The notes beneath the pieces were generated by a model, which was given only the letters and a program-made list of their open reading frames with translations, made no database searches and was not told the DNA's origin. Below, piece by piece: positions 2,346 to 8,300 of a DNA stretch of 64,000 nucleotides (positions are counted from its first letter, which is position 1; every line of letters starts with the position of its first letter). A program made the position numbers and the translations under genes. The stretch is from Chrysemys picta bellii (taxonomy: Eukaryota): contig NC_088807.1 of NCBI RefSeq assembly GCF_011386835.1, forward strand, positions 23,250,001-23,314,000, given 5' to 3'.

Positions 2346-5300
2346 CCGGGGATAATCACAGTCATTTTTCGGGGTCCCCTGAACCCCAACACATTGGTCT
2401 CCTGTTGTGAGGAGCAGCAGAGAATCTATGACCCCATCGTCCCCCAACATCCCCCTGCCCCAAAAACCCTCCACACCCTCGTCATATCTGTGACAGCGGC
2501 CAGCTGGGGATACCAGCGCTGCGAGCTTCCCCACAACAGTGCCCCCAGCTGGGGTTCCCAGCACTGAGAGCTTCTCTGCAGCAGTGCCCCCAGCTAGGGA
2601 TGCCGGTGCTGCGAGCTTCCCCATAGCAGTGACCCAACTGAGGAATGCCAGCGCTGCGAGCTTCCCCACAGCAGTGACCCAGCTGGGGACGCCAGCGCTG
2701 TGAGCTTCCCCACAGCAGTGCTCCGGCTCCAAGGTTTTCTCACGTACGTAGCAAATGGCCGCCAGCTCCTGCCGGATCGGAGCCGTTTCGGGACGAAGGG
2801 TTTTTTATCCGGATTCGTCCCGTTATCGAACACTGTGAACCTGGTGCCCAGCACGTTGGACCTGCCAGGAGATCAGAAAGGCCTGGTCACCTGGGGACCC
2901 CTCGCCCGGCGCTGGGATGCGACCGCCTCTGGGGTGGGGCGCGGGGGCTGGGTATACGGGGACCCCTCACCCAGGTGGAGATGCGGCCCCTCTGGGGTGG
3001 GTGCAGGACCCACCTGACTTTCCCGATGAAGCCGTCCCCATCCCGGGACAGGTCGATGGGGTCGAGGGAAATGAGGTAATTGGAGGTTTTGCTTTTCTTT
3101 CTCTTCCGGCCAGACATGAGAAACAGCTGAGAGAGACGGAAATGAACAACCTGCCCCAGGCTCTGCCCCACGGTGACCCCTCTTCCATTGCCTCCCCTGG
3201 CCTCTGCCCCACGGCGTCCCCTCTTCCACTGCCTTCCCCGGCCTCTGCCCCACGGCGTCCCCCTCTTCCACTGCCTCCCCTGGCCTCTGCCCCACAGCGT
3301 CCCCCTCTTCCACTGCCTCCCCTGGCCTCTGCCCCACGGTGTCCCCCTCTTCCATTGCCTCCCCTGGCCTCTGCCCCACGGCGTCCCCCTCTTCCATTGC
3401 CTCCCCTCAGCCTGCGCCCCACGGCACCCCCCTTCTCTGCCTTCCCCTGGCCTGTGCCCACGGTGCCCCCCTCTTCTGCTGCCTCCCCTCAGCCTGCGCC
3501 CCATGGCGCCCCCCTCTTCTCTGCTTCCCCCCAGCCTGCACCCCATGGCACCTCCCTCTTCCGCTGCCTCCCCCCCCCCAGCCTCTGCCCCCCGGCGCCC
3601 CCCTCTTCTGCTGCCTCCCCCCAGCCTGCACCCCACAGCACTCCCCTCTTCCACTGCCTCCCCCCTGGCCTCTGCCCCACGGCGCCCCCTCTTCCGCTGC
3701 CTCCCCTAAGCCTGTGCCCCATGGCGCCCCCTCTTCCGCTGCTTCCATCCATCCTCTGCCCCATGGCGCCCCCCTCTTCCACTGCCTCCCCCCAGCCTCT
3801 GCCCCATGGCACCCACCTCTTCCACTGCCTCCCCAGGCCTCTGCCCCACAGTGTCCGTTCCCCCCGCACTGTTACCCCCCCAGTACCTTCCTCCCATCGT
3901 CTCTTTCCAGGTGGAGGTAGTAGAAGGGGAAGACGCCCTTGTCCACCCCCTTGCGGTCCCGGCTGATGCGGCACTGGACGGTCACCCCGGGGGGCGCTGG
4001 GCGCAGCACGAACCCCTCCAGCTCCTCCGGCCGCGGAAGCCACGGGGTCCCCGGTGCTTCCTCCGGCAGCTGCGGGAGAGGGAAAGGGGTGAGGCCTGCG
4101 GGGGGGAGGGGGTGATGAGAGGCCAGGCCTTGTGTGCCCCGGGGTGGGGAGTCTGGGGGGGGGGGGTCACAGGGCCGGGGGCAAACGCCCAGGGCAGATA
4201 CTAGTGCAGGAGGCGTGTGTGGGACACGGGGGCCTCGTGCAAAGGGGTGCAAGGGGCCATCCTGGTGGGTGGGAGCCAGGCGCGGGGGCCCTTACGCTGG
4301 GGGTGTCGGCCTCTGGTGCGGGCTCCAGGGATCTGCAGAGGATGTCGGGGTCTCCTTCCTCCTCCTCGGCACTCCCAGGGGGGCTGCCGAGAGACCCTAG
4401 GGGGGAGATCAGGGGGAAGGTCAGAGAAAGCCCTGCCCCCCCCAAGCCGTCCTCAGTGCCCCCCCGAGAGCCCTTATCCCCTGAGCCCCCCTCCCTGGCA
4501 GCCCCCCCCACCTGGCACACATACCCCTGGCCCGCCCTACCCCATCCCCACTGGGCGCTCCCCCCACCTCACCCCTCTGTCCCAGAATCCTTTGCACTGA
4601 GCCAAACCCATCAGCACAGAGGGGTCAATCGATCCCCCCCCCAGCCTTCCCTACCCACAATGCCCCTCTCCCTCGCCCCCCCCTCACCTCTGCTGGGGAG
4701 CTTTCTGTCCTGTCTTCTCTTGACGGGGGAGGGAGGCACGGGGGGGTCCTGGGGCAGTTGCCCCTCCCCCTCTGAGTCCCCCTCCAGGGCTGACTCCCAG
4801 CCCGCAGCGCCGGCCTCCAGGGGGGTGTCCCCGTCGCTGCTGTCCTGAGGGTCTGGGGGGATGGGGAGGGAGCGCTTAGTGCTGGAGGAGACGCCCCCCA
4901 TGCCCGAGCCACTTTCACCCCAGCCTTGCATGGGCGCTTGGCAGTGAAACCCCCTCATGCCCGCTCACACATGAGGGATGCACCCTCGCCCCCCTTGCAC
5001 GCCCAGCTGCATGCTCCTCTCCCCCGCCCGGGCCAGTTGCACCAGGGCCGCAGTCTCCATGCCCCCCCCCCCTCGCATGTCCAGTCCCGCCCCGCTGTCC
5101 CACCTCCCCCCACAGATCCTGGTAGTGCCCCACCTCTGAACTCCACGATGACAGAGGGGACTCGCTCCCCTCGCGCAAGCGATGGGACATTCGGCTTAGA
5201 GCTCCGGGGGCGTCGTGCGTCGGCATGGCCGGCTGTGGGGCAGAGAGGGGGCCGGGGGGTAGAGGTGCGGGGTCAAAGGGTGCACTGTCCCCTTTAAAAG

Positions 5301-8300
5301 GCCGGGCCAGGGGCGTCATAGCAACCGTTGCTAAGGAGTTAGGAGTGTGACAATACAGCAACGAGGTGGGGCACCCACTGCACCGGTTGCATAGCAACGG
5401 AACGGTGCATGCAGCATGGCAACAGTTGCATAGCAACGGAACAGTGGGAGCAGCATGGCAACTGTTGCATAGCAATGGAATGGTGCACATATTATGGTGC
5501 ACGTGTGGCAACGGTTGCATGGCAACGGTTGCCCCTCTTTCCTGCCACTTGCTCACCCCCCGCTACGCTTGGCCGGCCAACCCTTGCGCGTGGAGCTGGG
5601 CGCCGCCTTGGCCTTGTTGATGGGCCGTGTGTCCTCCAGGACGGCCTCTTCCAGCTCCGCGTCGGAGGCACCTGGATGGGGGAGGCAGAGAGTGACGGAG
5701 CGGGCGGAGCCGGGGCGGGTCCCACCAGGGACTGGCCCCGCACCGAGGATCTGCCCCCCCCCGTTACCTGCGGCCTCCCCCCCGGCTCGGGGGCCCCGGT
5801 TCAGGTGCACGGAGCTGCTCCAGGCGTCAGTGGGGCGATGGGCCTCCGGGACCGACTCCACCAGGAAGGGGTTGCTGGTTCCTATGGGCAGAGAGAGTCC
5901 GTCACCTCCTGTGGCGCCAGCCACGCCCCCGGCAGACAAGCCCCGCCCCCGGCAGACAAGTCCCGCCCCGTTGGGTGAGACAAGGGGCGCTCCGCCATGC
6001 CACAGTTTAGAGTGGGTGGGGCCTAATGGCCATCGGCCACACCCCCAAATGCCACGCCTTCTTACCTGGGCCTAATTACTGGAAGCCCCGCCCACAACAG
6101 ACAAGCCCCACTGCTTCCCTGCCCTATTTTGGTTAAGAGGGGGAGCAGTTCTGCCCTCTGTATTAGGCCACCTGCTAGTGGGCGGAGTATATTTGCTATC
6201 AGCCCTGCCCACAAATAACAGGCCACGCCCACATACGCCACACCCCTTCTCTCTTTTTCCAATGGGATGGCTGCCTGCACTACTGCTAGTAGAGGCGGGG
6301 CCTAATTCTTGGAAGCCCCGCCCACTCTTAGCAAGCCTCACCCCCAAGAGGACCCACCCCTTCCACCTCTCTCTTGATTGACAGAGGGATACCAGGACAG
6401 CCACATCCTGTGCTGTGGGGGTGACTTTTGTTCATCAAGCCCCGCCCCAGTTGACAAGCCACGCCTCCATGGACAAACCACGCCCCTTTCCCCTGCCTTC
6501 CTCTCTGAACCAGGCAAACTATTAACCCCCTTTGTGGCGTTACCTCTGGCAGGGGCAAGGCCTAATTTTGGAAGCCACGCCCCTAATTGTTGAGCCACAC
6601 CACTACCTTGGGGTTGGAGGAGGGAGAGTCCCCCCTCCACCGTGACCTGACTGTGTGGGATTTCACCAGCCAGCCAATCACCCCAGTAGGGGCGGGGCTA
6701 GCCCATAAACCCCGCCCACCTGGTGAAGAACCAGAGCTGAGACCGGGGGGGAACTCATTACATGGGTGAGCATGGACCCCTCTCACCGTTGCAGAGGCTG
6801 TGGTCGCTGCAGGACTCCATCAGGGGGGTGCGCTCCTCGGGCCGGCGACCCCGGCGGCCCGTCACCTTGGCATCGGGGTTGGCCTGGACCATGAGCGGCT
6901 CCTGGCGCTTCCGACGCTGCTTCTCCTCAAAGATGCGACGCTGGGGGTGGGGGGAAGGGGGCAGGAAGGGAGAACAGGCCCTGGAGGCACTGTCCTGGGG
7001 AGACACCGCTCCCAGCCCCGATCCCCTCGATCCCAGAACCCCCCAGGGCCAGGGGGCACCACTCCCAGCCCCAATCCCCTCGATATTAGAACCCCCCAGA
7101 GACCAGGGGGCACCGCTCCCAGCCCCAATCCCCTCGATCCCAGAACCCCCCAGAGACCAGGGGGCACCGCTCCCAGCCCCGATCCCCTCGATCCCAGAAC
7201 CCCCCGGAGACTAGGGGGCACCACTCCCAGCCCCGATCCCCTCAATCCCAGAACCCCCCAGAGACCAGGGGGCACCGCTCCCAGCCCCGATCCCCTCGAT
7301 CCCAGACCCCTTGGGGGCTCCGCTCCCAGCCCCGATCCCCTCAATCCCAGAACCCCCCAGGGCCAGGGGGCACCACTCCCAGCCCCAATCCCCTCGATCC
7401 TAGAACCCCCCAGGGCCAGGGGGCACCGCTCCCAGCCCCGATCCCCTCGATCCTAGAACCCCCCGGAGACCAGGGGGCACCGCTCCCAGCCCCGATCCCC
7501 TCGATCCCAGACCCCTTGGGGGCTCCACTCCCAGCCCCGATCCCCTCAATCCCAGAACCCCCCAGGGCCAGGGGGCACCGCTCCCAGCCCCGATCCCCTC
7601 GATCCTAGAACCCCCCGGAGACCAGGGGGCACCGCTCCCAGCCCCGATCCCCTCGATCCCAGACCCCTTGGGGGCTCCGCTCCCAGCCCCGATCACCTCG
7701 ATCCCGGAACCCCCTGGAGACCAGGGGGCACCGCTCCCAGCCCCAATCCCCTCGATTCCAGAACCCCCTAGGAGATGCGAGGGCACCGCCCCGGGCACCT
7801 ACCTGCAGCTCCAGCTTCTGCTGCCGCAGGGACGCGGGCTCCTCGCCCAGGCGGCTGGAAGAGAAGGAGCCGGTGGCGTCGGGCGGCGAGGCGGGGCGGG
7901 AGGGCAGGCGCCGGTAGGAGCTCCGTGCCATCTCGCCGCCAGCCACCCACCCACCCAGGGGCCACCCCAGCAGACCCTGCCTTCACCAGGCCCAGGGACG
8001 GCCACGGCCGAGGTGGGGGGTTCCGATCGCCACGGCGCCAGGGTTTGTGATGTCATAGGTGCCCCCAGATGTTCCCTGGCCATGCAGCGCTGGGACGGGG
8101 CGCGGGGGCTGGGTCTATGGGGGCCCCTCGCCCGGCGCTGGGACGCGGCCCCTCTGGGGTGTGGTCTGAGAGACTCGGGGGGGGGTCACAAAGCAGGGGG
8201 TATCTAAGGAGGGGAATTTGGGGGCCTTGGCCTGGGGAGGCCCCTGGAAGGGTCTAAGAGACCCTGGGGGGGCCAGAGTAGAGACCCCCTGCAAGGAGGG

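What the first reader, a model, noticed from the sequence alone, without database searches (positions are those of the whole stretch)
5224..5533. RFX X-box palindrome array in a TULP2 intron, upstream of an in-frame ATG: candidate internal ciliary/testis promoter
The 324-bp intron (5233-5556) holds three perfect GTTGC-N3-GCAAC palindromes (5386, 5425, 5514) and a one-mismatch fourth (5464), spaced 39, 39 and 50 bp, with extra GCAACnGTTGC half-site pairs. GTTGC-N3-GCAAC is the classic EF-C/RFX1 site. On the TULP2 sense strand the array is followed by an AT-rich TTTTAAA (5293-5299) and an in-frame gccATG (5224-5226) in the next exon. RFX factors control ciliary and spermatid genes, and Tubby proteins act in ciliary trafficking. 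Inference: RFX drives a short isoform that keeps the tubby domain but lacks the N-terminal QEPLMVQ region.
Basis: partly seen in the sequence, partly recalled or inferred. Interest (0 to 1): 0.7.

Follow-up and report, generated by a model that had tools for sequence, protein, structure and literature searches.

The report
Conserved X-box-like array in TULP2 intron
A short intron of the turtle TULP2 gene (a sperm-tail gene in mice) holds a row of near-perfect docking motifs for the cilia regulator RFX, kept since turtles and alligators split, so it is probably a real control element, but not the start of a shorter protein.

Summary
The palindromes are real. There are three perfect GTTGC-N3-GCAAC sites and one one-mismatch site at the stated places (0.02 expected by chance). 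They sit in a decayed 39-bp tandem repeat in the 324-bp intron 4 of minus-strand TULP2.

New here: the same array lies in the orthologous intron of six other turtles, including a side-necked and a soft-shell-lineage species, and of the American alligator. In every one of these loci, all sites with at most one mismatch lie in that intron only. A gecko has only a decayed remnant.

Half-site columns are invariant across the seven turtles (window plus six) as often as the flanking coding exons (76% against 63-73%). The bases between them are invariant far less often (41%, p = 3e-6). Sites fit the RFX consensus GTNRCC-N-RGYAAC with one conserved mismatch. No compensatory changes support an RNA hairpin.

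Annotated protein models of other turtles (RefSeq among them) read exon 5 in another frame, so the ATG at 5224-5226 is out of frame. It is also absent from non-emydid turtles. No in-frame Met exists before the interior of the tubby domain.

Best reading: a selected cluster of RFX-type sites acting as an intragenic enhancer of TULP2. The scan has not reported this array on other DNA.

The parts
5233..5556 (-). Intron 4 of TULP2 (324 bp, GT..AG)
   Evidence: Searches show the sequence. The exon borders are fixed by tblastn of Trachemys TULP2 P0172 and by the seven-turtle alignment A2.
5316..5535 (-). Array of 14 GTTGC/GCAAC pentamers. Sense-strand unit: CC-GTTGC-YRT-GCAAC-C-RTTGCC plus a variable spacer.
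   Evidence: TRF finds a 39-bp period at 5386-5487 and a 14-bp period at 5506-5532. The intron holds 14 pentamers against 0.64 in shuffles. The unit matrix comes from 36 sites in 8 species.
5386..5398 (.). Perfect palindrome GTTGCATAGCAAC, one mismatch to the RFX consensus
5425..5437 (.). Perfect palindrome GTTGCATAGCAAC
5464..5476 (.). One-mismatch palindrome GTTGCATAGCAAT. The aligned site in Chelonia is GTTGCCAGGCAAC, a perfect consensus X-box.
5514..5526 (.). Perfect palindrome GTTGCATGGCAAC
5321..5331 (.). Outlying GCAAC-N-GTTGC pair, conserved in 6 of 7 turtles
5293..5299 (-). TTTTAAA inside the conserved GGCCTTTTAAAGGGG. Its role is unknown. It is not conserved outside turtles.
   Evidence: present in 6 of 7 turtles, deleted in Carettochelys; absent from the alligator intron.
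5269..5279 (-). CCTTTGACCCC, a likely branch-point sequence 40 nt before the acceptor
   Evidence: Conserved in 6 of 7 turtles. The fit to the yUnAy branch-point consensus is my own knowledge, so the branch-point role is inference.
5557..5675 (-). TULP2 exon 4 (..[38 protein letters not shown]). The G run 5556-5561 has one G more than in all other turtles.
5134..5232 (-). TULP2 exon 5, 99 nt, read as (A)[32 protein letters not shown]. It is skipped in frame in two annotation models.
   Evidence: Caretta P0175 and Macrochelys P0164 lack it
5224..5226 (-).

Best explanation
The array is a selected cluster of binding sites for a dimeric factor that reads a palindrome on double-stranded DNA. RFX-family proteins are the best candidate.

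Each unit offers three half-sites, GTTGCY, TGCAAC and RTTGCC. Two of them form an EF-C-type X-box with a 1-nt hexamer spacer. I infer that 3 to 7 such units recruit RFX dimers inside TULP2, about 2.4 kb downstream of the start-codon exon. There they would act as an intragenic enhancer of the normal TULP2 promoter in flagellated or ciliated cells, and less likely as a promoter.

Shown here: the motif content, its uniqueness within each locus, its presence in turtles and alligator, and stronger conservation of half-site bases than of the bases between them.

Inferred: RFX binding, enhancer activity and tissue.
For: 1. In seven archelosaur loci of 9-38 kb, plus the window, every site with at most one mismatch to GTTGC-N3-GCAAC lies in intron 4. 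There are 4 perfect sites in the alligator and 5 in Emydura, against about 0.01-0.02 expected.
2. The pentamer count stays at 13-16 per intron in six turtles and the alligator, although intron length varies from 316 to 808 bp and unit number varies. Shuffles give 0.6-1.4.
3. With motif positions defined on the window alone, identity to other turtles is 88-100% at those positions and 51-82% between them. Fisher p runs from 0.025 to 5e-6, and the result holds without CpG positions.
4. Column by column, 76% of motif columns are invariant in 7 turtles, against 41% of non-motif columns (p = 2.6e-6). Exons 4 and 5 score 73% and 63%. Only 1 of 5000 random block placements reaches the observed value.
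5. Positions that played no part in picking the sites (+13 to +19, CRTTGCC) are also 26-35 of 36 conserved.
6. Of the 36 sites, 29 lie within one mismatch of the published RFX consensus GTNRCC-N-RGYAAC, and 2 are perfect.
7. RFX1 and RFX3 bind such inverted repeats (EP/EF-C/MDBP sites) in viral enhancers.
8. Tubby genes are RFX-dependent in C. elegans and Drosophila. Mouse Tub is down in the Rfx2 knockout list.
9. Mouse Tulp2 is testis-specific and needed for sperm flagella.
Against:
- Most sites carry a conserved departure from the RFX consensus: T instead of a purine at the first base of one half-site, in 31 of 36 sites. The true reader could be another factor.
- X-boxes of ciliary genes usually sit close to the transcription start (my own knowledge). 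This array sits in intron 4.
- Tulp2 is absent from the held supplementary lists of RFX2-dependent or RFX-target genes in mouse and human.
- Turtles and crocodilians evolve slowly, and the units turn over. Part of the persistence may therefore be inheritance plus repeat homogenisation.
- Alignment inside a repeat can favour matching words.
Confidence: 0.5

Rival explanations
1. First reader's model. The array plus the TTTTAAA box is an internal promoter. Its transcript starts near 5240-5280 and uses the ATG at 5224-5226 to make a short TULP2 that keeps the tubby domain.
For: The motif cluster lies 20-90 bp upstream of an A/T-rich box that is conserved in 6 of 7 turtles. X-boxes are usually promoter-proximal (own knowledge).
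Against: - The ATG is out of frame with exon 5 as read in all annotated orthologues.
- It is absent outside emydids.
- The nearby ATGs of the other turtles and of the alligator fall in different frames.
- There is no in-frame Met before LFLMSGRK inside the tubby domain.
- The A/T box is absent in Carettochelys and the alligator, although the array is kept.
- No annotated isoform begins at exon 5.
Confidence: 0.06
2. RNA-level element. In the pre-mRNA the array binds a splicing factor or folds into hairpins just after the exon 4 donor and ahead of the 99-nt exon 5, and so controls exon 5 inclusion.
For: - Exon 5 is 99 nt, and two annotation models (Caretta, Macrochelys) skip it in frame.
- The array starts 25-60 nt from the donor in turtles, alligator and, as a remnant, gecko.
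- The intron RNA folds better than shuffles (z = -3.1).
Against: - Across 53 sites and 5 stem pairs there is not one compensatory double change. All departures are one-sided.
- All copies keep the same letters, not just complementarity.
- Both arms of the palindrome are equally conserved. That fits a dimer on double-stranded DNA better than a strand-specific RNA motif.
- A good fold is automatic for any palindrome array.
Confidence: 0.14
3. Neutral minisatellite. An old palindromic tandem repeat that persists because turtle and crocodilian DNA changes slowly and slippage keeps regenerating units. The RFX likeness is chance, as with other motif-spelling repeats in this genome.
For: - It is a tandem repeat whose copy number and period differ between species: 39 bp in the window, 42 in Emydura, 34 in the alligator.
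- This genome has other minisatellites that spell CTCF, E-box or CCAAT motifs.
- Exons of this gene are themselves only 72-84% identical between turtle and alligator.
Against: - Decay is not uniform. Pentamer columns are as conserved as coding exons and much more conserved than interleaved bases.
- The core 21-mer is shared by the turtle and alligator consensus units, while the spacers differ in length and largely in sequence.
- Most other intron sequence no longer aligns between turtle and alligator.
Confidence: 0.18
4. A cis-regulatory cluster read by a factor other than RFX. Candidates are another palindrome-binding dimer that prefers GTTGCYATGCAAC, or MYB at the CCGTTG words.
For: T at the eighth base is conserved in 31 of 36 sites, against the RFX consensus. 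Turtle units contain CCGTTG, the reverse of CAACGG, which I recall from memory as a MYB-type word.
Against: In the alligator CCGTTG has become CCATTG while the 13-mers stay perfect. MYB words are therefore not the conserved part. I know of no other factor with this exact palindrome, and literature searches for the 13-mers found nothing relevant.
Confidence: 0.1

Closest known systems
EF-C / EP / MDBP sites, the RFX1 and RFX3 inverted repeats of the polyomavirus and hepatitis B virus enhancers
   Same: They are inverted repeats bound by RFX dimers and act in enhancers, not at a start site. That their form is GTTGC-N3-GCAAC, with hexamer half-sites 1 nt apart, is from my memory. The alligator 27-bp unit consensus carries GTTGCTAGGCAAC, which I recall as the polyomavirus EF-C core.
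   Different: Here most copies read GTTGCYATGCAAC, so one half-site is TGCAAC rather than RGCAAC. The sites also come as 3-7 tandem units with a third half-site 1 nt downstream, inside a cellular intron.
Promoter X-boxes of ciliary genes, including tubby genes (C. elegans tub-1, Drosophila CG9398/Tulp)
   Same: The target gene family and the motif family are the same. RFX dependence of tubby genes is documented.
   Different: Those X-boxes are single or double sites within a few hundred bp upstream of the start codon. This one is a multi-copy array in intron 4. No X-box with at most one mismatch lies upstream of exon 1 in the window.
[quoted passage not shown]
   Same: Several RFX sites in one gene are proposed to tune expression level, not to add up simply.
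   Different: That case has two separated 15-bp sites in an upstream region. They are not a tandem repeat and not intronic.
Motif-spelling minisatellites of this same turtle genome (CTCF array near FGF21, CCAAT coding repeat in PLEKHA4)
   Same: Each is a tandem repeat whose unit spells a transcription-factor motif.
   Different: Those follow-ups, as summarised, found no sign of selection on the motif. Here the motif bases are selectively conserved and the array is shared with a crocodilian.

Membership tests
RFX X-box (EF-C type) | Two inverted hexamer half-sites GTNRCC and RGYAAC separated by 0-3 nt | tested here: inconclusive
   Of 36 sites in 8 species, 2 are perfect, 27 have one mismatch and 7 have two. 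All three perfect palindromes of the window have one mismatch. The mismatch, T for R, is itself conserved.
RFX X-box (EF-C type) | Bound by RFX proteins in vitro or in vivo | not testable with these tools
   No ChIP or EMSA data for reptiles. Tulp2 is absent from the held mouse and human RFX target lists.
RFX X-box (EF-C type) | Conserved in orthologous regulatory DNA | tested here: met
   Present in the orthologous intron of 6 other turtles and the alligator. Motif columns are more conserved than their neighbours.
RFX X-box (EF-C type) | Promoter-proximal position, as typical for ciliary targets | tested here: not met
   The array lies in intron 4, about 2.4 kb downstream of the exon that holds the start codon (7931).
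Alternative internal promoter giving an N-truncated protein | A downstream in-frame start codon that yields a functional product | tested here: not met
   The ATG at 5224-5226 is out of frame and not conserved. The first in-frame Met lies inside the tubby domain.
Alternative internal promoter giving an N-truncated protein | Transcription start sites mapped in the intron | not testable with these tools
Neutral minisatellite | Head-to-tail units with copy-number change between species | tested here: met
   TRF periods are 39, 42, 34 and 27 bp. There are 2-5 perfect sites per species.
Neutral minisatellite | Even decay along the unit, with no position-specific constraint | tested here: not met
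   76% of motif columns are invariant against 41% of non-motif columns, p = 2.6e-6. Only 1 of 5000 random block sets reaches that value.
Conserved RNA hairpin or intronic splicing structure | Compensatory base-pair changes | tested here: not met
   No double changes at 5 stem pairs in 53 sites.

The most novel reading that the evidence does not exclude
The array is a DNA-bound roadblock rather than an enhancer. RFX dimers sitting on 3-7 tandem sites between exon 4 and the 99-nt exon 5 would slow RNA polymerase II and so set exon 5 inclusion in flagellated or ciliated cells. This intragenic factor-to-splicing coupling would be a counterpart of the reported CTCF effect on CD45 exon 5 (recalled from memory). 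It would have been kept since before turtles and crocodilians split, which I recall as about 250 million years ago, through constant turnover of the repeat units.
Probability: 0.07. Interest if true: 0.75.

Novelty: new member of a known kind. Interest (0 to 1): 0.45.

Why it matters
TULP2 is needed for sperm flagellum formation in mice, yet its transcriptional control is not described in the papers I could search. A strongly conserved cluster of RFX-type sites inside the gene gives a concrete, testable element that links a vertebrate tubby gene to the RFX cilia and flagella programme already known for worm and fly tubby genes. It is also a clean example of a tandem repeat whose units turn over while the factor-binding bases stay fixed, which bears on how binding-site clusters are maintained. 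For the scan, it shows that a motif-spelling repeat is not always an accident. Here the cross-species test separates it from the CTCF and CCAAT repeats seen nearby.

Tried and rejected
- **RNA evidence.** I did not resend the letters, so read laying was unusable and there are no data on start sites or exon 5 usage.
- **Rfam.** The scan of 4500-6500 gave only a sub-threshold mir-1238 match outside the intron. I rejected a known RNA.
- **RNA hairpin.** The fold is good (z = -3.1) but there is no covariation.
- **MYB sites (CCGTTG).** They are not kept in the alligator.
- **RBFOX GCAUG and NOVA YCAY words in the spacers.** They are present in some turtles but do not coincide with the conserved bases.
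- **CRE half-site TGACG before the A/T box.** It occurs only in emydids.
- **Dispersed repeat or transposon.** There is no other copy in 64 kb plus about 125 kb of loci. A genome-wide test was not possible.
- **Mammalian counterpart.** Tulp2 is not in the held RFX2 or RFX target supplements.
- **Literature search for the exact 13-mers.** Nothing relevant. Emery 1996 is not held, so I took the consensus from papers that quote it.
- **Spliced model.** I did not build or search a joined spliced model of the window's gene. Exons were compared by reference and against database proteins only.

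
Full report
**The observation.**
- The plus strand holds GTTGCATAGCAAC at 5386 and 5425, GTTGCATGGCAAC at 5514, and GTTGCATAGCAAT at 5464.
- The pattern GTTGC-N3-GCAAC occurs three times in the 64-kb window, all here, against 0.02 expected.
- GCAAC-N-GTTGC occurs five times, all here, against 0.04 expected.
- Ten of the window's 67 RGYAAC half-sites fall in 5320-5533.
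- The sites are not independent. Tandem Repeats Finder reports a 39-bp unit (2.6 copies, 84% matches, 5386-5487) and a 14-bp duplication at 5506-5532. The four units are 68-85% alike.

**The gene.**
- The minus strand encodes a tubby-family protein. The exon at 3875-4090 is 97% identical to a Chrysemys picta protein.
- Trachemys TULP2 (P0172) maps exon by exon onto 7931-2345.
All comparisons were made exon by exon or with database proteins.

**The reading frame.**
- Annotated proteins (RefSeq and GenBank records) of Trachemys, Emydura, Carettochelys, Dermochelys, Gopherus, Mauremys, Chrysemys and Pelodiscus join the exons as ..SG|[15 protein letters not shown]...VPSVIVEFR|DPQDSS. The alligator does the same with ..QRK|APISEAR...VPSVIVDFR.
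- In that frame the ATG at 5224-5226 straddles a His and an Ala codon.
- The ATG exists only in the window and Trachemys. Other turtles have GCG or GTG there.
- The nearby ATGs of the other turtles and of the alligator fall in different frames.
- No orthologue has an in-frame Met between exon 5 and LFLMSGRK, which lies inside the tubby domain.
- A transcript starting in the intron therefore cannot encode a protein that keeps the tubby domain.

**Conservation.**
- I fetched the TULP2 loci of Chelonia, Emydura (a side-necked turtle), Carettochelys (soft-shell lineage), Trachemys, Macrochelys, Dermochelys, Alligator and the gecko Eublepharis.
- The array is present in intron 4 of all six turtles and of the alligator.
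- In each whole locus, every site with at most one mismatch to the palindrome lies in that intron and nowhere else.
- The alligator has 4 perfect and 3 one-mismatch sites, and Emydura has 5 perfect sites, against 0.01-0.02 expected.
- The period differs: 39 bp in the window, 42 in Emydura, 34 and 27 in the alligator. Copy number differs too.
- The pentamer count nevertheless stays at 13-16 per intron in six turtles and the alligator, and is 7 in the shortened Carettochelys intron. Shuffles give 0.5-1.4.
- The gecko intron has no such site. It has only a half-decayed ACTGCCAGGCAAC at the position of the first unit.
- Between the window and the alligator, little outside the exons and the array still aligns.

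**Is it selected?**
- I defined motif positions on the window alone. Identity to the other turtles is 88-100% at pentamer positions and 51-82% at the interleaved positions. Fisher p runs from 0.025 to 5e-6 for the five non-emydid species, and is similar after removing CpG positions.
- Counting each column once, 76% of pentamer columns are invariant in seven turtles, against 41% of other array columns (p = 2.6e-6). Exons 4 and 5 score 73% and 63%. Only 1 of 5000 random placements of fourteen 5-bp blocks reaches the observed value.
- A matrix of 36 sites from eight species gives the unit CC-GTTGC-YRT-GCAAC-C-RTTGCC. The last seven positions were not used to pick the sites, yet they are 26-35 of 36 conserved.
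- Caveats: species share ancestry, aligners favour repeated words, and unit turnover can renew motifs.

**What reads it.**
- The published RFX consensus is GTNRCC(0-3N)RGYAAC.
- With a 1-nt spacer, 2 sites are perfect, 27 have one mismatch and 7 have two.
- The recurrent mismatch is a T where a purine is expected (31 of 36 sites). One half-site is therefore perfect and the other is TGCAAC.
- RFX1 and RFX3 bind such inverted repeats in the polyomavirus and HBV enhancers.
- Tubby genes depend on RFX in C. elegans and Drosophila. Mouse Tub is in the down-regulated list of the Rfx2 knockout, but Tulp2 is not listed.
- Mouse Tulp2 is testis-specific and needed for sperm flagella.
- An RNA hairpin is not supported. 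The intron folds well (z = -3.1), as any palindrome array would. At five stem pairs in 53 sites there is no compensatory change, and all copies keep the same letters.
- MYB-type CCGTTG words are lost in the alligator while the palindromes stay.

**Verdict.** The palindrome array is real, ancient and under position-specific constraint. The best explanation is an intragenic cluster of RFX-type binding sites regulating TULP2 (confidence about 0.5). The rivals are an RNA-level splicing role near the 99-nt exon 5, another factor, or neutral persistence. The internal promoter with a short isoform is not supported.

Noticed in passing
window 5556-5561 and 2748-2863: The window's TULP2 has 1-bp frame breaks relative to Trachemys and all other turtles. 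One is an extra G in the run at the end of exon 4. The other is a shift inside the exon encoding ..[21 protein letters not shown]. Together with the HSD17B14 frameshifts noted earlier nearby, this looks like assembly indel error in GC-rich DNA, but real gene decay is not excluded.
   Followed up: partly
window 5134-5232: Exon 5 is exactly 99 nt. The Caretta and Macrochelys annotation models skip it in frame, so it may be a cassette exon.
   Followed up: partly
one search hit list: None of the 120 TULP2-like proteins listed (of 155 found with the N-terminal half of tuatara TULP2) is from a bird, although turtles, crocodilians, squamates, amphibians and mammals are all there. This may mean gene loss or unassembled GC-rich DNA in birds.
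   Followed up: no
window 5269-5299: GGCCTTTTAAAGGGG and CCTTTGACCCC are conserved in 6 of 7 turtles. They are deleted in Carettochelys and absent in the alligator. The second fits a branch point 40 nt before the acceptor. The first is unexplained.
   Followed up: partly
L008 8200-8260: The gecko intron 4 keeps a half-decayed ACTGCCAGGCAAC at the place of the first turtle and alligator unit. This hints that a proto-site predates the split of lepidosaurs from turtles and crocodilians.
   Followed up: partly
window about 7000-7800 and 3200-3900: There are long GC-rich minisatellites in TULP2 introns, open in several frames ([15 protein letters not shown]-like and [11 protein letters not shown]-like translations). 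An N gap lies at about 1850-2350.
   Followed up: no
L001 3001-3933: The Chelonia model P0002 (754 aa) fuses 311 residues encoded 26 kb upstream onto TULP2 and reads through intron 3. It is likely a chimeric gene prediction in a gapped assembly (29% N).
   Followed up: no
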